Positions 46,269 through 61,016 of a stretch of DNA of 64,000 nt are shown here, one piece after another. Numbering within the stretch: position 1 is the first letter of the stretch; every line of letters starts with the position of its first letter. The stretch is from the IMG/VR virus record IMGVR_UViG_3300027793_000052, positions 186,001 to 250,000 of that record. One strand, 5' to 3'. Below the pieces are notes generated by a model. It made no database searches. It was not told where the DNA came from and worked only from the letters and a program-made list of their open reading frames with translations. Position numbers and translations under genes: made by a program.

Positions 46269-46300
46269 CTTGACAACCAAAATGAAAGTTCATATATTTG
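46269..46300 (+). promoter_or_regulatory. Bacteroidota-type promoter (CTTG-N20-TATATTTG)
   Basis: Exact -7 box 5 nt upstream of ATG 46306. Confidence 0.6.
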
Positions 46301-46305
46301 TATAT

Positions 46306-47889
46306 ATGGACTTTTCTTTTTTTATAACAGACAATAAATCTGGTCATAAGACCAAAGAGTCGTGGTTTTCTAAAAACCACCCAAAGGAATATCAAGCGGT
46401 GATTGATTATTGTGGTAGTAAATTACCAACAGATTCTTCTTTCAAAGAGAAGGTTTGGGTTTATTTCAACGCACTAGATGGTAGACCTTGTTGTGAATCC
46501 TGTGGTTCAACGGTTAAATTTTCGGAAAGGTTCGATAGAGGTTACAATCAGTTTTGTTCGTTGGATTGTGCTAACAAGAGTGGTTTATTAATAGATAAAA
46601 TTAAAAAGTCCAACCTAGAAAACCACGGTGTTGAATTTTACACCCAACACAAAGATTTTGTTGGTAAGCAGAAAAAAACTAAATCAGTTAGATACGGTAA
46701 TGAAAACTATAATAACGTAGGAAAAATGTTATCCACCAAGTTGGATAAATATGGTAATACAAATTATAACAATTTTGACTTATATAAGAAGACGTGTTTA
46801 AATAAATACGGTGAAGATAATTTCTGTAAAACAAAACAATATAGGGATTTATTAAAGAATAAAATTAAGGAAAGATACCCTAATTTAAATATTAAAAATA
46901 TTTCAGAAGATTTATCGGAATTGGAGATTTTGTGTGACGATTGTCACACCGAATATAAGATATCCCAAAGTTTACTTAGAGAACGTGTTAAACACAAATA
47001 TGTTAATTGTACTAACTGTAATCCTGTTGGTATGTCCTTTTCTTCCTCTTATGAAGATGAGTTATCTAAGATATTAAATGAGTGGGGTGTGGCACATTTA
47101 AGACACACCAAAATACCTGGTACTAAGTTAGAATTAGATATTTTAATACCACAAATTAACCTCGCCATCGAATTCAATGGGTTATTTTGGCATAACGAAC
47201 TTTTTGTTAACACTGAGTATCATTTAAATAAGACGGAATTGTGTGATAAAAACGGAATGGATTTAATACATATATTTGAGGACGAGTGGTTGTATAAAAA
47301 AGATGTGGTACTATCTATAATAAAAAACAAATTAGGGTTGATTACCCAAAGGGTATATGCCAGAAATTGTAGGATTAAATTAGTAACAAGTGGTCAACAT
47401 AAAGATTTTTTAGAGGATAATCACATACAAGGTTCTGTCAACACAACAATCAAATTGGGTTTATTCTATGGTGACGAATTAGTTTCATTAATGACCTTTG
47501 GTAGACGAAATGGTATTGGTAAAACTATAGATTGGGAACTTATTAGATTTTGTAATAAAAAAGATACGATCGTTGTTGGTTCAGCATCTAAGTTATTTAA
47601 ATATTTTATAAAAAACTATGAACCTAAAAATGTTATCTCTTACTCTGATAGAAGGTGGTTTTCGGGTGAATTATATCAATTGTTAGGGTTTAAACCAACA
47701 ACACCATCTCAACCAAATTATTGGTACGTTAATAATACGATTAGATACCATAGATTAAATTTCAAGAAAAACGTTTTGGTTAAACAAGGGTTTGATAAAA
47801 ACAAATCTGAACGTGAAATAATGTTTGAACGTGGATATTACCGTATATATGATTGTGGTAATATAAGATGGGAATATTTTTCTGAATAG
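46306..47889 (+). mobile_element. Putative free-standing endonuclease (Zn-finger + PD-(D/E)xK-like + GNAT/Mom-like), copy 2
   Basis: CESCG/FCSLDC; KYG repeats; ELDILIPQINLAIEFNGLFWH; YARNC...HIQG...WELIRFC...RIYDCG. Start set at MDFSFF (46306), after the promoter. Confidence 0.75.
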
Positions 47890-47924: not shown

Positions 47925-48353
47925 ATGAAAAAATTTATATTAACTTTTTTATTTTTCTTTATTTGTTTAACTTCTTTATGTCAAACAAATTATATTTTTA
48001 CGACCAAAGAATATAATACTTGGAAAGTTTCTGGTAACCCTATTTGTGGTGTGGGCAATGCTTATTGTACCGTGATTAGAAGTAACCAGCCCAATATTTA
48101 CGGTAATTATATATATGAAATATATTTTGCCACAAATTCTTATTTTGTTAATTGCCAAGTTTCTAGAACTTATATTCCAAACATATATGTCTACTATTAT
48201 GATGATAAATTAAACAAATATTTATTACCATTAAATTTTTACCCTTTTTGGATAACTGTCGGTAGTACAAGTTTAGTTTATACATTGTATCACCCCAACC
48301 CCTATTTAAAATTAACCATTTCGGTGGGTAAAATGGAACCAACAAATTATTAA
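47925..48353 (+). CDS. Secreted/periplasmic protein with Sec signal peptide
   Basis: MKKFILTFLFFFICLTSLC followed by Q. Confidence 0.7.
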   Translation: MKKFILTFLFFFICLTSLCQTNYIFTTKEYNTWKVSGNPICGVGNAYCTVIRSNQPNIYGNYIYEIYFATNSYFVNCQVSRTYIPNIYVYYYDDKLNKYLLPLNFYPFWITVGSTSLVYTLYHPNPYLKLTISVGKMEPTNY

Positions 48354-48355
48354 AA

Positions 48356-48736
48356 ATGTCAAATAATATACAAGATAATGAGGTAAATATCGGTCCCCAA
48401 AAAATTGGTCCCAATACCGTAATTCAAATAAATTTAAAAACTTTATTAACATTATTAGGTATTTTGGGGTCTGGGCTTTTTTATCTTTGGTCTGACATAA
48501 GTAATAAGGTTGAGGCTTATAATAAATCCAATTATGACCAAATAGAAACTTTGAAGGATGAAATTAGGTCAATAAAGGATCAAGATTTAAAAACAATTTC
48601 AATTCAATTAAATCAAGTTGATGGTAAGGTTCAAGGAATTTTTATGAATGTTCAACGAGATATTTATAATCCAAATACTGTTGTAAATACCAATCGTCAA
48701 CCTGAAAATATAATAAAACCTAATAGTCCAAAATAA
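48356..48736 (+). CDS. Single-TM coiled-coil membrane protein
   Basis: LLTLLGILGSGLFYLW followed by a heptad-like segment. Confidence 0.7.
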   Translation: MSNNIQDNEVNIGPQKIGPNTVIQINLKTLLTLLGILGSGLFYLWSDISNKVEAYNKSNYDQIETLKDEIRSIKDQDLKTISIQLNQVDGKVQGIFMNVQRDIYNPNTVVNTNRQPENIIKPNSPK

Positions 48737-48744
48737 TATTTCAT

Positions 48745-49149
48745 ATGAATATTAAACATATAATTAAGGAACAACTTATTCTAGAGAAAAAGATAGCTCA
48801 GATAACCGCTAACCTCATAATTAATTTTGATTTAAGACATGACGAGAGAAGTGAACATGGTCAAGACAGAAAGTGGAGACATGTTGGCAAAGCTGGTGGT
48901 GAAAGAATATATGATAGTAATATAAAAGATCTTATTGAATGGGCTAAAAACGATATAAGTTTTAATATAGCAATGGAACAAATTCAAGACAATGTACGTT
49001 TTATTGTTTCACAAAAAAATTCACCATATTTAAATGTTATAATAGAACCAAAAATGAAAAATCCTTATGATTGGGTTCTTAGTGTCATCACTGTCATGAA
49101 TAAACAAGATTTCGATATAGGTCGAGGACAATTACAAATATTTGTATAA
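48745..49149 (+). CDS. Putative RelE/BECR-fold ribonuclease-like protein with N-terminal IIKE motif
   Basis: EHGQDRKWRH (H-x-x-x-R-x-x-R) and C-terminal VITVM pattern. Confidence 0.45.
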   Translation: MNIKHIIKEQLILEKKIAQITANLIINFDLRHDERSEHGQDRKWRHVGKAGGERIYDSNIKDLIEWAKNDISFNIAMEQIQDNVRFIVSQKNSPYLNVIIEPKMKNPYDWVLSVITVMNKQDFDIGRGQLQIFV

Positions 49150-49150
49150 T

Positions 49151-49187
49151 TAAAAACCCCACTAGTATTCTGACTGTGGGGTTTTTA
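49151..49187. terminator. Bidirectional terminator
   Basis: TAAAAACCCCAC-N13-GTGGGGTTTTTA. Confidence 0.85.
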
Positions 49188-49295
49188 TTTTTCACCATTA
49201 ATATCCGTTAATGATTGAGGAGTTTCACCTTGACGTTTCGTGTCATTACGTTGATTAGGTTCAAGGGACTAACCAATTCAACCCTGTTTCTTTAA
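49151..49295 (-). ncRNA. Candidate ~145-nt small RNA (or 12-aa micropeptide mRNA)
   Basis: Bounded by a consensus promoter (49301-49331) and a terminator; the only ATG-initiated ORF is MTRNVKVKLLNH (49246-49208); several potential stems. Confidence 0.45.
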
Positions 49296-49300
49296 CAATA

Positions 49301-49331
49301 CAAATATAAATATCTTTTAATTAATGGCAAA
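49301..49331 (-). promoter_or_regulatory. Bacteroidota-type promoter (TTTG-N19-TATATTTG)
   Basis: Exact consensus; overlaps a same-strand ATATTTAT at 49306-49313. Confidence 0.75.
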
Positions 49332-49362
49332 ATTTTTTCAATAAAAAAGATATTTATATGAT

Positions 49363-49845
49363 ATGAAAGATTTAATTCGTAAAATATTAAAAGAAAACGA
49401 AGATGAGTTTGGTTGGGTTGAGGCTGACGAACATTCAATAGAACAAGGAAAAAAAATTGTTTATGAAAAATGGCGTCAAATTGAAATGGATTTTGGTGCT
49501 GATTTGGAAGATGTTTTTGATGAATTGAAAGATTTTGGTGTATACGACCCTAAACAATTATTAAGTATGGCTGAAATATTGTACGATCAATTTCAAGAAG
49601 TTCACGATAACGGACATCGTGATGGTTATGATTCTGGTATGGATAATTGTACTTGTGATGGTTGTTGTGATGATTATATATGGTATGAAACTCATGAAGA
49701 AGAAGTTGAGGAAGCGAGGGAAGAAGGTTATGAAAGGGGTAAAGAAGAAAGTGAATCCGAAATAGAAGAATTAAAATCTAGAATAGAAGAATTAGAAAGT
49801 CAATTAAATGAAAACATTAATAAAAAAAATACTAAGAGAATCTGA
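49363..49845 (+). CDS. Acidic hypothetical protein with MKDLIRKILKE motif
   Basis: ORF; CTCDGCC cluster; C-terminal coiled coil. Confidence 0.75.
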   Translation: MKDLIRKILKENEDEFGWVEADEHSIEQGKKIVYEKWRQIEMDFGADLEDVFDELKDFGVYDPKQLLSMAEILYDQFQEVHDNGHRDGYDSGMDNCTCDGCCDDYIWYETHEEEVEEAREEGYERGKEESESEIEELKSRIEELESQLNENINKKNTKRI

Positions 49846-50284
49846 TTTTGAATGGGCTAATGAGTTCATTAATAATGAAACTCTGCCTTTTGAAATTGTC
49901 AAAGAACCCTTAAACAAACCACAAAAAAGTAATCTTTTTGTTATGAAAACAGAGTGGGAATATGCTGATACATATCTTAGGGAAGAATTTGTTTTTCATT
50001 CTGAAGATCCAAAAGAATTTGAAACTTTTGTTAATGTTTGTAAATTTTATTTGGTTCTATTGGATTCTCGTGGTTATAGTATATGGAAAGATGTGTCGGT
50101 ATTAGCCAAAAGTATTGATTTGGCTTTGGGGTCTTATGATGACGAAGACGCCTATGGTACATCTAAAGACATGTCAGATTTTGTTGCTGGTTCTGATGTT
50201 CCAGCTTATCTTGAAAGTGTTGAAATTTCTTATTTTGATGAAGGTGGTGTTGAATATGAAGTTAGATTAAAAGAACCTGATTAA
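49808..50284 (+). CDS. Acidic hypothetical protein with MKTLIKKILRE motif
   Basis: ORF overlapping the previous gene by 38 nt; shares IL-x-E...F-x-W N-terminus. Confidence 0.75.
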   Translation: MKTLIKKILRESDFEWANEFINNETLPFEIVKEPLNKPQKSNLFVMKTEWEYADTYLREEFVFHSEDPKEFETFVNVCKFYLVLLDSRGYSIWKDVSVLAKSIDLALGSYDDEDAYGTSKDMSDFVAGSDVPAYLESVEISYFDEGGVEYEVRLKEPD

Positions 50285-50285
50285 C

Positions 50286-50315
50286 AAAAAAAGGGACCGT
50301 TAAGTCCCCATTTTT
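50286..50315. terminator. Probable bidirectional terminator
   Basis: A7-GGGAC-N6-GTCCC-CA-T5 between convergent genes. Confidence 0.6.
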
Positions 50316-51306
50316 ACCAATCAAAATCGTATTTGGATTTATCATCATAATTACCACCGTTATAATAAGGATTTTTATTACTTCTATCTGATCCTAGAAA
50401 CTCTCCATTATTGAATAATAAATCAAAATCATCGTCATCATCTAAGTCATTAAAAAAATCACTTTTTTTTTCTTCATTTAATAAACCTCTATTGTTTGAG
50501 TTACTAAAAGAATAGGTTTTTTCTTGTTTACGATTTTCATATTTTTCTTCACCCAATTCAGATATTAATTTAAGACCTAATTCAAAACCGTTTTGGACAT
50601 CGTCGATAATAACATATTCATGGTCAGTATGATAACGATAATAGCCGGCCGCTAAGTTAAGACAAGCTATATCAAATTTCCCAACAATTTGCCAAGCGTC
50701 AGTGTAAGGGTGGTATGCCCAATCATCAATTCCAGCTTCTGTAATTAAACCCGTAACCTTGTTAGCGAATTCACTTTCTTGATTAAATAAGTAACGTCCC
50801 ATAAGTGTTAAACTCATGGAATTACCTTCAGGTGAGTCGTATTGAATACCATAACCAACATTCTTAAAGAATTCAGGGTCAGCGTACTTACTACCTTGAC
50901 ACCCTATTTCTTCAGATACAAAGAAAGCTGCCTTAACGTTTTCTAATGTGTCTAACATCTCTAAACATAGAAACACCCCACACTTGTCATCACCACCGAT
51001 ACCTGACGGTTGTTTGGTCTTACCATCAATACCTCTAAGTATTTGTTTACCGTCCTTAACTTCTTCAACCACTTTTAGGTTTAAGTTAACTCTGTGCACA
51101 GTATCAGTATGTGAAATAAAACATGGGTACCATTCAGCTTTACCTTTGGTTGCGTAAATATTACCGTGTGTGTCTGTATAATGTTCTATACCTTTTTCTG
51201 TTAGAACTTTCTGAAGATACTCAATCATTAACTTCTCATTTCTAGAATGAGTAGGTACTGATAGTACTTCTTTTAAACGATTGAGTTTTTCTTGTGTCAT
51301 TTTCAT
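50314..51306 (-). CDS. Zinc aminopeptidase, M28/M42/M20-like
   Basis: SHTDTV, GGDDKCG, SEEIG, QYD and YHTDHE metal-ligand motifs. Confidence 0.88.
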   Translation of the reverse strand: MKMTQEKLNRLKEVLSVPTHSRNEKLMIEYLQKVLTEKGIEHYTDTHGNIYATKGKAEWYPCFISHTDTVHRVNLNLKVVEEVKDGKQILRGIDGKTKQPSGIGGDDKCGVFLCLEMLDTLENVKAAFFVSEEIGCQGSKYADPEFFKNVGYGIQYDSPEGNSMSLTLMGRYLFNQESEFANKVTGLITEAGIDDWAYHPYTDAWQIVGKFDIACLNLAAGYYRYHTDHEYVIIDDVQNGFELGLKLISELGEEKYENRKQEKTYSFSNSNNRGLLNEEKKSDFFNDLDDDDDFDLLFNNGEFLGSDRSNKNPYYNGGNYDDKSKYDFDW

Positions 51307-59500: not shown

Positions 59501-61016
59501 TTATAATTTACTTTATGATGATTTAGTTAATTTTGAAGACGGTGATGGTGTAAAATTAGATTGTGGTGAGGGTTGTAACGAATATTATCCTAAAGAAGTT
59601 GATATGCCAAGAGACATAAGGTGGTCTTTAAAATATAACCCACTTAGTGATGATGTTGGTAGTGGTTGCCCTAATTCTACAAAAATTAATGGTCGTTGTC
59701 CTGACGGTAATCCTTGTTCAAGTACACCTTTGGAAGACGGTCAAGCAAATTCAAAAACCGCTAAACTACAAAGATATGTTTCTATTACATTAGAAGAAAA
59801 TACTGATATACAAACTTCTATTTTAAATACAATAAATTTAAAAAATCAACCAGAGTTTTTAAAACAACAAGAATTAAAAAACAAACAAGAAAGGGACGCT
59901 AGAGAAAGTTTAATAGGTAGATTTATAACAGAAATGGATTATTTTTCAGAATTAGAAAGAACCGACCCTGTGGCTTTTAAAAATTTACATGACAAAATTG
60001 ATAACTTTCATCCAGCCTTTCATTCTATGACACCTGAAGGTCTTAACTCTCGTTTAACATTTTTATTACAATGTACAAGACAAGGACCACAATTAATAGA
60101 TGAAGGTACTACACCACAAAACATGGTGTTCGGTAGACCACCCATTTGTGTTTTAAGAATTGGTGATTTTTATCATACTAAAATTGTTATCGATTCCGTT
60201 AATATAACTTATGAACCTTTACAATGGGATTTAAATCCAGAAGGTATTGGTGTACAACCTATGATTGCCAAAGTTAGTATGGGATTTAAGTTTATTGGTG
60301 GTTCTTCATTGGGTGGACCTATAAAACAACTACAAAACGCTGTGTCTTATAACTTTTTTGCTAACACAGGTGTTTATAGACCGTTTAAGAAAATTGTCGA
60401 CGATAACGTTCAAAGTAAAAAATCTTTAGTTTATGGAGCCTTTTTAACACCTGATCAGGCAGAAGATTTTTATAACCCAAAATTAGGTAGTGAGGATAAT
60501 CCAATACAACTAAAGGAGGTTGAAATAACCGCTGGTAATGATGATACTAGTAATGTAACTACGGATGATAAAACTAAAAAAGAAATAGAAGACGGTTCGT
60601 CAAAAAATTTAGATGACAAAGAAAAAACAACAGACGGTGACAATAAACCTAAAACAACAACACCAAAAGAAAAAGTAGATGTAGGTCAAATAATAGTTAA
60701 CGCAAACGGTACTGTAACAGTAAGTGACATAAACACAACAGTTAAAAAAGGTGGTACATATAGAGTTCTTTACAAACTTGTTAATAAAATGATATCACCG
60801 GTTATTATAACAAATGTTAGTTATTCTGATTGTCCTTCTTGTACTAAACCCACATCACAATTCCCAAAACAACCTGTTTTAAAAAATCAAACAATAGATA
60901 TATGGGTTTACGACACACCAAAAATAGACTTATATACGCAGAAAAGTGCAAATATAAATTTAATTACTAATGGACCTAAAAGTATTGTAATAAAACCTAT
61001 AATAAAACCAGAATAA
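56571..61016 (+). CDS. Large baseplate/tube-initiator protein with OmpA-like and DUF1573-like domains
   Basis: WFPPY...WETTSFIGRGEPIYTYNNSER tube-like domain; IVGYTS...FNQKLAEDRVNSV...RYVSI OmpA-like; C-terminal PVIITNV..SDCPSCT.P...P..PV. Confidence 0.7.
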   Translation: MSNQINPFNYNIDNFDSGFLGPISDTNFRNFLFTHSLASVNPIVGGVLGGNPLADRGTEYDIAQSTFNVIDIPNLTDVAVQPSFYNNLTEPRPDNLDRNLQQINQQVVDNTSVSSTNPDQEGRNVDAATLLNINPTIIDLPGLKEVSNTPSFYNNFTNPKQDNLDFNPTKDELISWYPYQNYINILNQEYDTYNTDWTVPTTLRIGYVGNVDEWVLGGNIVTTSDVRDRGYYMLNNVYGPKDIIQYYTSNNKRENNSSVVEQLDEVLTQGTGFKQYNTKVSGDFRDALLSRSLGVGIIPFSEVSSGINYEPIEGEGPSELDKEARKRRGIELKNRIQLNFVDDTLGIVNTNVFGILAGGTLLNRDFSITRPKSNLGKVADFIANLTGFNYPKSILEPDDLNLLSYNKEVQVGREINPSNINEIDVASDLLDRTGKATRELIIDTTNINKYGPNFEGEYTKFNDGTYLSDDDSLITKQNQKRGPIPTNDGEVSDDTQEGGFYGQNEYPRKNPFSYVSGFNSLDNNPDITDHTKFVWTSNETENKKSSNPFKKGLLKYTQNIVNNSKSDLNKLGGYIGYFDSLESKKDGVHKTGSDNPSTNPTLPSKGNQVRNVRVKKGGGTEGGDLYCRSWASTNRFGKSYEDLVRSGGNWWLGVKNNKNLVKDDNSLLTMNYGKNPTGIPKIAWTKEDLDRFKKIVRSEGDTRGMVIPYMFSIENLAWKDAVQYRYLPPSERGPNSGRIMWFPPYNLNFSENNSVNWETTSFIGRGEPIYTYNNSERTGNLDFTIIVDHPSVLNQLRDDFVSKVTDEKARDNIYHSFFAGCNMKELEELFSSYQIADKELTNEEIGFTPDTQQYQPVTASKPKAPPFDEIKIYFENCRSSTGDYGPPKNIGRSVSDLFVYGYEDTKSTIAGDNPNLDICSGTTGLNAGVIDKISKLVEFLLTPDGKNYKINIVGYTSPADPSSGFNQKLAEDRVNSVYNLLYDDLVNFEDGDGVKLDCGEGCNEYYPKEVDMPRDIRWSLKYNPLSDDVGSGCPNSTKINGRCPDGNPCSSTPLEDGQANSKTAKLQRYVSITLEENTDIQTSILNTINLKNQPEFLKQQELKNKQERDARESLIGRFITEMDYFSELERTDPVAFKNLHDKIDNFHPAFHSMTPEGLNSRLTFLLQCTRQGPQLIDEGTTPQNMVFGRPPICVLRIGDFYHTKIVIDSVNITYEPLQWDLNPEGIGVQPMIAKVSMGFKFIGGSSLGGPIKQLQNAVSYNFFANTGVYRPFKKIVDDNVQSKKSLVYGAFLTPDQAEDFYNPKLGSEDNPIQLKEVEITAGNDDTSNVTTDDKTKKEIEDGSSKNLDDKEKTTDGDNKPKTTTPKEKVDVGQIIVNANGTVTVSDINTTVKKGGTYRVLYKLVNKMISPVIITNVSYSDCPSCTKPTSQFPKQPVLKNQTIDIWVYDTPKIDLYTQKSANINLITNGPKSIVIKPIIKPE

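What the first reader, a model, noticed from the sequence alone, without database searches (positions are those of the whole stretch)
49151..49331. Orphan transcription unit: candidate structured small RNA convergent with the RNase-like gene
Seen: a perfect host-type promoter overlapped by an ATATTTAT motif fires into about 145 nt with no ORF longer than 12 codons from an ATG, ending in a terminator shared with 48745..49149. The RNA can form UUGGUUAG/CUAAUCAA (8 bp), whose loop CCUUGA is complementary to downstream UCAAGG (pseudoknot), in competition with a UGAC/GUCA hairpin. It is more GC-rich than the flanking spacers. Inference: an undescribed phage sRNA, possibly an antitoxin for the neighbouring nuclease or a protein-sponging RNA. 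A 12-aa micropeptide is the alternative.
Basis: partly seen in the sequence, partly recalled or inferred. Interest (0 to 1): 0.65.

Follow-up and report, generated by a model that had tools for sequence, protein, structure and literature searches.

The report
Conserved structured small RNA of jumbo phages
The flagged spacer holds a real, strongly conserved gene for a roughly 146-nt folded non-coding RNA of uncultured freshwater jumbo phages; it matches no described RNA family, and its function and expression are still unproven.

Summary
The minus strand of 49151-49331 carries a consensus Bacteroidota-type promoter (TTG-N19-TATATTTG) and about 146 nt with no conserved ORF. It ends in a bidirectional terminator. 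I found 21 distinct homologues in related phage contigs. The RNA core is 83-98% identical where the neighbouring gene's DNA is 63-80% and the promoter spacer about 52%. Five helices are 98.6% paired. 14 of 31 pairs carry compensatory double changes, and no shuffle in 500 reaches this. 37 G.U pairs assign the RNA to the minus strand. The proposed pseudoknot is not supported. The H1 loop instead pairs with an upstream AGGG, and the downstream AGG forms its own mini-hairpin. The 12-aa peptide is broken in 6 of 21 homologues. Rfam, cultured phages and 185,579 bacterial genomes hold no match. Four metatranscriptome assemblies cover the flanks but not 49195-49290, so transcription is unproven. Most unpaired bases are invariant, which points to a fold-dependent, probably protein-binding RNA. 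The partner may be the co-inherited 134-aa protein, whose resemblance to RelE/RegB RNases is weak. The verdict is a new family of a known kind, with function unresolved.

The parts
49325..49330 (-). -33 promoter element TTGCCA (TTG core at 49330..49328)
   Evidence: TTG is kept in 19 of 21 homologues while the spacer diverges.
49301..49308 (-). -7 promoter element TATATTTG (Bacteroidota TAnnTTTG)
   Evidence: The consensus, with G at -5, is from PMC6847099.
49306..49313 (-). ATATTTAT phage promoter-like motif overlapping the -7 box. It is one arm of the 15-bp inverted repeat 49304-49318 / 49345-49359.
   Evidence: It overlaps the promoter in only 4 of 21 homologues (L070 has a copy just upstream), so it is not a conserved part of the RNA gene.
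49150..49296 (-). Predicted primary transcript, about 146 nt. The start at 49296 is inferred from G(-5) of the -7 box. The 3' end is inferred to lie in the U-tract.
   Evidence: Inference. The covariance model match spans 49146-49300 (G000 235146-235300).
49282..49285 (-). AGGG, 5' strand of the proposed H-type pseudoknot
   Evidence: 100% paired with CCCU of the H1 loop, and A-U becomes C-G in L070.
49251..49276 (-). Helix H1 (49276..49269 with 49258..49251) and its 10-nt loop. CCCU at 49267..49264 is the 3' strand of the pseudoknot.
   Evidence: 99-100% paired, 4 pairs with double changes.
49231..49245 (-). Helix H2, UGAC/GUCA, with loop ACGAAAC
   Evidence: 96% paired, 2 pairs with double changes. 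1-nt indels in the loop are tolerated.
49218..49230 (-). Mini-hairpin H2b, AGG / CCU, with 7-nt loop UGAAACU
Evidence: The closing pair appears as AU, UA, CG, GC and GU.
49194..49215 (-). Helix H3, 8 bp, with a variable loop
   Evidence: 99% paired, 4 pairs with double changes.
49182..49193 (-). Near-invariant A-rich linker GAAAAAUAAAAA
49152..49181 (-). Terminator hairpin H4 (49181..49174 with 49165..49157), near-invariant loop UCAGAAUA (49173..49166; L070 lacks the C) and U-tract 49156..49152. On the + strand it also terminates gene 48745..49149.
   Evidence: The stem covaries (entirely rebuilt in L068) while the loop stays the same.
48745..49149 (+). Convergent 134-aa gene, co-inherited with the RNA. 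It has a weak RelE/ParE/RegB-like fold.

Best explanation
The minus strand of 49150-49296 is a genuine, independently promoted gene for a roughly 146-nt structured non-coding RNA. It belongs to a family found so far only in a clade of uncultured, roughly 320-kb T4-like jumbo phages.

Shown:
- Unmodified host RNA polymerase should be able to read the gene, because the promoter is a conserved Bacteroidota sigma-A type.
- The RNA folds into helix H1, two small adjacent hairpins (H2 and H2b), helix H3, an A-rich linker, and an intrinsic terminator whose 8-nt loop UCAGAAUA is near-invariant.
- It does not encode a conserved peptide.

Supported by a single covariation event: the H1 loop is tied back to an upstream AGGG, giving an H-type pseudoknot.

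Inferred:
- The RNA is made early in infection.
- It acts through its three-dimensional fold and invariant loops, most likely by binding a protein as a decoy, regulator or cofactor. A single antisense seed is less likely.
- The most plausible partner is the co-inherited 134-aa protein with a weak RelE/RegB-like RNase fold. That link is unproven.

My odds: a real functional structured RNA gene, about 0.9. A fold-dependent or protein-binding mode rather than seed pairing, about 0.45. The 134-aa protein as the partner, about 0.15-0.2.
For: Homologues:
- 21 distinct homologues came from IMG/VR, JGI, ENA and Logan contigs.
- The RNA core is 83-98% identical to the window copy. The adjacent gene's DNA is 63-80% identical.
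- Mean pairwise identity is 0.90 in the core, 0.52 in the promoter spacer and 0.48 upstream.

Structure:
- On a plain MAFFT alignment, 99.0% of cells pair and 8 pairs carry double changes. Slid controls pair 23-46%.
- On the 21-sequence model alignment, 98.6% of cells pair and 14 of 31 pairs carry double changes. No shuffle in 500 reaches the observed value on any of the five measures.
- Strand: 641 of 650 cells pair when read as the minus strand, including 37 G.U. Only 607 of 650 pair when read as the plus strand.
- Pseudoknot AGGG/CCCU: 100% paired, with A-U changed to C-G in L070.

Promoter:
- TTG-N19/20-TAnnTTT(G/A) is kept in 19 of 21 homologues.
- This promoter type is about 20-fold enriched in the genome's intergenic DNA.

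Fold-dependent mode:
- 55 of 76 unpaired core columns are invariant. Unpaired columns are more conserved than paired ones, 94% against 92%.
- The terminator loop stays the same while its stem is rebuilt (L068).
- The loop motif G-UCAGAAUA-C recurs in a different, non-terminator hairpin of the otherwise unrelated convergent RNA next to the 41-43%-identical protein in L032/L033.
- No phage translation-start region pairs with any RNA segment better than shuffled controls do.

Partner:
- The RNA and the 134-aa gene co-occur within 1.5 kb in every contig with enough sequence. The independent DNA-pattern scan of IMG/VR found the RNA only in contigs that also carry the protein.
- The fold list for the protein is dominated by RelE/ParE/YoeB/HigB toxins and T4 RegB.
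Against: - No transcript evidence. In four metatranscriptome assemblies the flanking genes are covered but no contig covers 49195-49290. The peptidase gene 50314-51306 has the same promoter type and is the best-covered part. Contigs, size selection against RNAs under 200 nt, and the tool's own caveat ('a hole proves nothing') prevent a negative conclusion.
- All homologues come from one syntenic phage clade. Co-occurrence with the 134-aa gene may simply reflect common descent.
- In L023, L024, L026 and L053 other genes lie between the two.
- The protein's fold matches are weak: Z <= 4.7, no Foldseek hit under 1e-3, and no Pfam, PHROG, PADLOC or NCBIfam family.
- The pseudoknot rests on one covariation event.
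- Host targets could not be tested, because the host is unknown.
Confidence: 0.55

Rival explanations
1. It is a classical trans-acting, base-pairing sRNA. It is made early from the host-type promoter. One or more exposed conserved segments (the 5' AGGGUUGAAU, the H1 loop, or the terminator loop) pair with host mRNAs, or possibly phage mRNAs, to change their translation or stability.
For: - It is a stand-alone unit with a host-type promoter and an intrinsic terminator.
- It has conserved single-stranded segments.
- This is the commonest mode of known phage sRNAs (review PMC12197685).
Against: - Conservation is not confined to a seed. Nearly all unpaired bases along the whole RNA are invariant.
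- No phage translation-start region pairs better than with shuffled RNA segments.
- The 5' AGGG and the H1 loop appear to pair with each other.
- Host targets are untestable here.
Confidence: 0.25
2. It is a cis-antisense or toxin-antitoxin-like regulator of the convergent gene. The RNA and the mRNA of 48745..49149 share the terminator hairpin. Their complementary 3' ends interact, or the RNA binds the RNase-like protein, which keeps the RNase-like product in check.
For: - The arrangement is convergent with a shared hairpin.
- The RNA is linked to the 134-aa gene in every contig, including the distant L032/L033 pair, where the RNA has otherwise changed but keeps the G-UCAGAAUA-C loop.
- The protein's structural neighbours are mostly RelE/ParE-type toxins and T4 RegB.
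Against: - The overlap is only about 40 nt of terminator. A complementary overlap would not require an invariant loop sequence.
- In L023, L024 and L026 a different gene abuts the RNA, and in L053 three genes intervene.
- There are no tandem repeats as in type III antitoxins.
- The neighbour is not a small hydrophobic type I toxin.
- Toxicity of the protein is unknown and its fold evidence is weak.
Confidence: 0.15
3. It is a micropeptide gene: the 12-aa MTRNVKVKLLNH or the 22-aa TTG-started version.
For: The ORF exists in the window.
Against: - The ATG is followed directly by TGA in L015, L017 and L029.
- A 1-nt deletion shifts the frame in L021, L050 and L052.
- Indels of 1-3 nt in several loops break every frame on both strands.
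- Substitutions keep base pairs, not codons.
Confidence: 0.02
4. It is not an RNA gene. Conservation would reflect a DNA-level element, such as a homing-endonuclease target, a recent gene-conversion tract, or only a terminator plus promoter spacer.
For: - Free-standing homing endonuclease genes sit at varying positions around this locus (window 46270-47889; L070; the P0004 contig).
- No transcript was seen in the contigs.
Against: - Compensatory changes occur in 14 pairs.
- There is a 37:3 excess of G.U over A.C on one strand.
- Conservation stops exactly at the RNA's ends, while the promoter hexamers are kept across a diverged spacer.
Confidence: 0.03

Closest known systems
Stand-alone sRNA genes of virulent phages (for example the PAK_P4 sRNAs; functions mostly unknown; review PMC12197685)
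   Same: A short non-coding unit with its own promoter and an intrinsic terminator inside a lytic phage genome. Function is not evident from sequence.
   Different: - No sequence or Rfam relationship.
- The host phylum is inferred to be Bacteroidota, which the review does not mention.
- Here the evidence is comparative (covariation), not transcriptomic.
Type I toxin-antitoxin pairs with convergent 3'-overlapping antitoxin RNAs (B. subtilis txpA/RatA and bsrG/SR4; from my own knowledge)
   Same: An sRNA is transcribed convergently to a protein gene, and the 3' ends overlap.
   Different: - The neighbour is a 134-aa soluble alpha/beta protein, not a small membrane peptide.
- The overlap is limited to the terminator.
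- Adjacency is broken in several lineages.
Type III toxin-antitoxin systems (ToxIN, with pseudoknotted ToxI RNA bound to an endoRNase; from my own knowledge)
   Same: A pseudoknotted RNA may partner with an RNase-like protein. The setting is phage-related.
   Different: - There are no tandem repeats.
- The orientation is convergent, not upstream and co-directional.
- The protein resembles RelE/RegB weakly. I did not see ToxN/AbiQ among the 50 structural neighbours listed.
T4 RegB endoribonuclease and the RelE/ParE superfamily (for the neighbouring protein only)
   Same: Similar size, helix-helix-beta-sheet order and T4-like phage context. The structural neighbour list is dominated by this superfamily.
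   Different: Z is only 3.7-4.7, with no sequence-family match. Catalytic residues were not compared.

Membership tests
Any Rfam 15 family | Covariance-model score at or above the family's gathering threshold | tested here: not met
   There are 0 hits in the whole window. In E-value mode only terminator-driven hits appear, at 14-25 bits against gathering scores of 39-175.
Bacteroidota sigma-A promoter | -33 TTG and -7 TAnnTTTG about 19 nt apart | tested here: met
   The promoter reads TTG-N19-TATATTTG. It is conserved in 19 of 21 homologues. The consensus is from PMC6847099.
Intrinsic (Rho-independent) terminator | GC-rich hairpin followed by a U-tract on the transcribed strand | tested here: met
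   There is a 6-8 bp GC-rich stem followed by UUUUU. All 21 homologues have 5-7 U.
Structured ncRNA (generic criterion) | Compensatory base-pair changes beyond controls, with conservation exceeding the flanks | tested here: met
Expressed sRNA | Discrete transcript of the predicted size and strand | tested here: inconclusive
   Four metatranscriptome assemblies leave 49195-49290 uncovered. Contigs show no strand or ends. Short RNAs are often lost.
Micropeptide gene | ORF conserved in frame and length among homologues | tested here: not met
   A stop at codon 2 in 3 lineages and a frameshift in 3.
Type III antitoxin RNA (ToxI-like) | Tandem direct repeats of about 34-36 nt, upstream of and co-directional with the toxin gene | tested here: not met
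   No tandem repeat was found. The orientation is convergent.
Type I antitoxin RNA | Antisense overlap with the mRNA of a small hydrophobic toxin, and strict adjacency | tested here: not met
   The neighbour is 134 aa and not hydrophobic. Only the terminator overlaps. Adjacency is lost in L023, L024, L026 and L053.
RNA anti-CRISPR (solitary repeat mimic) | Close similarity to a CRISPR repeat of a host | tested here: inconclusive
   Two pattern scans of 185,579 species genomes gave 0 hits and 9 chance hits, with no arrays. Only near-exact mimicry was testable, and the host is unknown.
RelE/ParE/RegB RNase fold (neighbouring 134-aa protein) | Significant structural or sequence match and catalytic residues | tested here: inconclusive
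   The model has pLDDT 80. The best Foldseek E-value is 0.28. The best VIA Z is 4.7, though the list is dominated by this superfamily. There is no HMM family.

The most novel reading that the evidence does not exclude
The RNA and the co-inherited 134-aa protein form a new kind of RNA-protein module in jumbo phages. A RelE/RegB-fold endoribonuclease would have its activity or specificity set by a dedicated pseudoknotted sRNA, which it recognises through the near-invariant G-UCAGAAUA-C hairpin loop. The RNA would act as antitoxin, decoy substrate or guide-like cofactor during host takeover.
Probability: 0.15. Interest if true: 0.8.

Novelty: new member of a known kind. Interest (0 to 1): 0.58.

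Why it matters
Phage-encoded small RNAs are known almost only from phages of Proteobacteria and Firmicutes, and mostly from transcriptomics. This one was found from sequence alone in uncultured freshwater jumbo phages that appear to infect Bacteroidota, a phylum without Hfq or ProQ (from my own knowledge).

The RNA is conserved more strongly than the adjacent 134-aa gene's DNA. It has a well-supported secondary structure and a plausible pseudoknot. Its loop motif survives even where the rest of the RNA has been replaced. That makes it a concrete target: synthesise and probe the RNA, and test its binding to the neighbouring RNase-like protein. It is also a seed for a new RNA family model.

If the RNA-protein link holds, it would be a new way for a phage to control an RNase.

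Tried and rejected
- Rfam, at gathering thresholds and in E-value mode: only terminator look-alikes. No tRNA or tmRNA in the window.
- blastn of 48300-50300 against 50,697 cultured-phage records: no match.
- IMG/VR exact-pattern scan: only the contigs already found through the protein, plus 3 chance hits.
- Two pattern scans of species-representative bacterial genomes: 0 hits, then 9 chance hits with no CRISPR arrays. The covariance model found nothing in those loci.
- Covariance-model search of the whole phage genome and four relatives' records: a single copy each. The other hits are terminator-driven.
- The alternative single-sequence fold of the H1 region (GUUGA/UCAAC plus GGUU/AACC): compatible at 92.8% paired, but with no compensatory change.
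- Duplex-energy target search of four RNA segments against all 382 crude gene starts of the phage: nothing better than shuffled controls. A first version timed out.
- Relatives cannot be drawn for a virus record.
- The distant protein subgroup (L033 type) has 8 relatives.
- PADLOC, NCBIfam, Pfam, PHROGs and the PDB sequence profile for the 134-aa protein: nothing meaningful. The ESM Atlas gave only viral hypothetical clusters.
- Sigma-factor adjacency: seen in relatives, but in this genome the sigma gene lies at 302.9 kb. I dropped it as a clue.

Full report
CONTEXT

The window is bases 186001-250000 of a 317,983-bp IMG/VR virus record with 30% GC, judged 96% complete. It carries T4-type structural genes: a baseplate protein (PF12322), a weak gp19-like tail tube match, and a baseplate-hub PHROG. 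No cultured phage matches the region at the DNA level. Runs holding the DNA are mostly freshwater metagenomes.

THE OBSERVATION

On the minus strand, 49330..49301 reads TTGCCA, 16 nt, TATATT. This was the best sigma-70-like hit in the local scan, although such hits as a class are no more frequent than chance there: 21 found against 22 expected.

The same bases read as TTG-N19-TATATTTG. That is the Bacteroidota -33/-7 consensus TTTG/TAnnTTTG, in which the G lies at -5 (PMC6847099). This places the start at 49296.

This promoter type is what the phage really uses. It occurs 28 times in the genome's 23.3 kb of intergenic DNA, against 1.4 +/- 1.1 in shuffles. Most copies lie in the 2-107 kb region and have the recurring form TTTGCCA...TTATATTTGTA.

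ATATTTAT overlaps the -7 box at 49313..49306. Genome-wide, 97 of its 155 copies are intergenic, although only 8% of the genome is intergenic by my crude gene calls. 92 copies lie within 150 nt upstream of a same-strand start, typically 5-35 nt away. It is therefore a second, phage-specific promoter-like motif. The copy at 49349-49356 serves gene 49363. The two copies are the arms of a perfect 15-bp inverted repeat.

The hairpin at 49157-49181 has A/T runs on both sides and ends both the 134-aa gene and the minus-strand unit. GC is 0.36 here, against 0.22-0.29 in the neighbouring spacers. ORFs inside the unit are a 12-aa ATG ORF, its 22-aa TTG extension, and a 26-aa TTG ORF on the + strand. A 34-aa ATG ORF from 49198 runs out through the terminator.

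HOMOLOGUES

The neighbouring 134-aa protein has 37 relatives at 44-97% identity. I fetched their contigs from IMG/VR, JGI metagenomes, ENA and Logan. nhmmer and a covariance model then found the spacer sequence in all of them that reach far enough. This gave 21 distinct copies.

- The RNA core is 83-98% identical to the window's copy. The adjacent gene's DNA is only 63-80% identical.
- Mean pairwise identity is 0.90 in the core, 0.70 in the short 5' leader, 0.52 in the promoter spacer and 0.48 further upstream.
- Conservation therefore begins and ends with the predicted RNA.
- The promoter hexamers survive across a scrambled spacer in 19 of 21 copies. One of the other two is cut by its contig end.
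- ATATTTAT overlaps the promoter in only 4 of 21 (L070 has a copy just upstream), so it is not part of the conserved gene.

STRUCTURE

I tested the following structure on a plain MAFFT alignment of 17 sequences (A2):
- H2b, a new 3-bp hairpin (AGG, a 7-nt loop, CCU).
- H3, 8 bp.
- H4, the terminator.

On A2, 99.0% of cells pair and 8 pairs carry changes on both sides. No more than 1 shuffle in 500 reaches the observed value on any measure. Sliding the 3' partners by 1-3 columns drops pairing to 23-46%.

RNAalifold independently recovered H1, H2b, H3 and H4.

On the 21-sequence model alignment (A3), 98.6% of cells pair and 14 of 31 pairs carry double changes. No shuffle in 500 reaches this on any of the five measures. 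That alignment is fitted to the model, so it leans towards the structure, but A2 is not fitted.

The strand is settled. 641 of 650 cells pair on the minus strand, including 37 G.U. Reading the plus strand turns those into A.C and pairs only 607.

- It is 80% paired with no compensatory change.
- The G-C pair is present in 3 of 17.
- The variable first base of AGG covaries with the base after CC in H2b, appearing as AU, UA, CG, GC and GU.

Instead, the invariant AGGG five bases upstream of H1 can pair with the invariant CCCU in the H1 loop. The one sequence that changes either base changes both, A-U to C-G in L070. That gives an H-type pseudoknot. It is geometrically reasonable but rests on a single event.

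The window's minimum-free-energy fold of this region uses another register. That register is tolerated but has no covariation support.

NOT A PEPTIDE

The 12-aa ORF becomes ATG TGA in L015, L017 and L029, and is frameshifted by a 1-nt loop deletion in L021, L050 and L052. Indels of 1-3 nt in the H1, H2 and H3 loops and in the H4 stem break all frames.

WHAT KIND OF RNA

No Rfam family matches. The phage has one copy and no paralogue, and so do four relatives' records. Two pattern scans of 185,579 bacterial and archaeal species genomes found nothing real and no CRISPR repeat resembling H1.

The conservation pattern is informative:
- 55 of 76 unpaired core positions are invariant, and unpaired columns are slightly more conserved than paired ones.
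- Stems drift by compensation while loops and linkers stay fixed along the whole length.
- The clearest case is the terminator. In L068 its stem is rebuilt base by base while the loop UCAGAAUA is untouched.
- Next to the most distant protein relatives (L032/L033, 41-43% identity) lies a convergent RNA with the same promoter type and an otherwise unrelated sequence. It carries the same G-UCAGAAUA-C loop on a different, non-terminator hairpin.
- A simple duplex search found no phage translation-start region that pairs with any part of the RNA better than with shuffled versions.

Together this reads more like an RNA that works through its fold and is recognised by a protein than like a seed-pairing antisense regulator. 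The latter cannot be excluded, because the host is unknown.

THE NEIGHBOUR

The 134-aa protein has no Pfam, PHROG, PADLOC or NCBIfam family. An AlphaFold model from 23 sequences has pLDDT 80. Foldseek finds nothing below E = 0.28.

The exhaustive structural search gives at best Z = 4.7, below the level the tool advises trusting. More than half of the top 30 rows are nonetheless RelE/ParE/YoeB/HigB/YafQ toxins, plus T4 RegB at Z = 3.7. 'RNase-like' is therefore a reasonable lead, not a finding.

The RNA and this gene co-occur within 1.5 kb in every contig. The DNA-pattern scan of IMG/VR, which did not use the protein, returned only contigs that also carry it. All of these are syntenic relatives, however.

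In L023, L024 and L026 a small gene of the MKNLIRKILKE family lies between the 134-aa gene and the RNA. In L053 three genes do. The RNA stays at the end of the + strand gene block rather than next to one particular gene. The overlap with any convergent mRNA is only the terminator.

EXPRESSION

Six metatranscriptome runs hold the 5.9-kb stretch as assembled contigs. I laid four of them on 5,901 letters, within the operators' limit.

- The flanking genes are covered in all four.
- The depth table is fully explained by the listed contigs plus a 33-nt cross-match from paralogues. No contig covers 49195-49290 in any run.
- One contig ends at 49194, just after the + strand terminator. Another begins at 49291, five bases from the predicted start of the RNA.
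- The peptidase gene 50314-51306 has the same promoter type and is the best-covered part.

The holes show that the signal is not uniform DNA carry-over. Contigs carry no strand or ends, RNAs under 200 nt are commonly lost in such libraries, and the tool warns that a hole proves nothing. Transcription is therefore not demonstrated, and abundant expression in these samples is not supported.

VERDICT

This is a real feature and a new RNA family of a known general kind, a phage-encoded small structured RNA.
- The micropeptide alternative is refuted.
- The antitoxin idea is open and somewhat weakened.

No alternative genetic code was used.

Noticed in passing
whole genome G000; in the window e.g. 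49349-49356 (+), 49306-49313 (-): ATATTTAT(A) is a sense-oriented motif 5-35 nt upstream of many start codons. 92 of 155 copies lie within 150 nt of a same-strand start. It is probably the phage's own middle or late promoter. It is not the T4 late box TATAAATA, whose orientation shows no such bias (29 of 141).
   Followed up: partly
window 49363-49845 and 49808-50284; also G000 48681, 75837, 78698, 80010, 81160, 140649, 145812: A multi-copy gene family has the conserved N-terminus M(K/R)xLI(K/R)KILKE...W. Each copy has ATATTTAT 5-7 nt before the ATG. Paralogue contigs cross-match 49363-49395 in the metatranscriptomes. A member is inserted between the 134-aa gene and the RNA in L023, L024 and L026.
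   Followed up: partly
G000 60762-60960 (outside the window; locus L064): A second orphan Bacteroidota-type promoter is followed by about 170 nt without an ORF. This stretch folds into a very stable long hairpin (-56.7 kcal/mol). It contains UGGUGAAAAUCCACA, the same 15-mer as the H2b hairpin of the L017/L029 versions of the RNA studied here. It has no Rfam family and may be a second sRNA sharing a module.
   Followed up: partly
G000 66305-66485 minus strand (locus L065): Three tandem Bacteroidota-type promoters lie within 180 nt. They are followed by a stretch in which my crude gene calling found no gene.
   Followed up: no
window 46270-47889 (+): A free-standing homing endonuclease gene of 539 aa (PHROG 3339, DUF7487). 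Related genes sit at different positions around the RNA locus in relatives: directly upstream of the RNA in L070, and directly upstream of the 134-aa gene in the P0004 contig. This suggests a homing hot spot next to the highly conserved RNA gene.
   Followed up: no
window 50314-51306 (-): An M42/M20-like peptidase gene with a consensus host-type promoter (G000 237328), embedded in a late structural region on the opposite strand. It is the best-covered segment in all four metatranscriptome assemblies.
   Followed up: no
L048, L050, L053, L066, L069; G000 302968-303180: In relatives a phage sigma-70 family gene (regions 1.2, 2 and 4) lies next to the 134-aa gene. In L066 it lies directly upstream of the RNA on the same strand. 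In this genome the sigma gene is about 68 kb away.
   Followed up: partly
L032:562-690 and L033:1349-1473, minus strand: The most distant relatives of the 134-aa gene are followed by a different convergent RNA. It has the same promoter type, its own terminator, and the same G-UCAGAAUA-C loop on another hairpin.
   Followed up: partly
window 49304-49318 / 49345-49359: A perfect 15-bp inverted repeat, ATATAAATATCTTTT / AAAAGATATTTATAT, lies between the divergent promoters of the RNA and gene 49363. It is present only in the closest relatives.
   Followed up: partly
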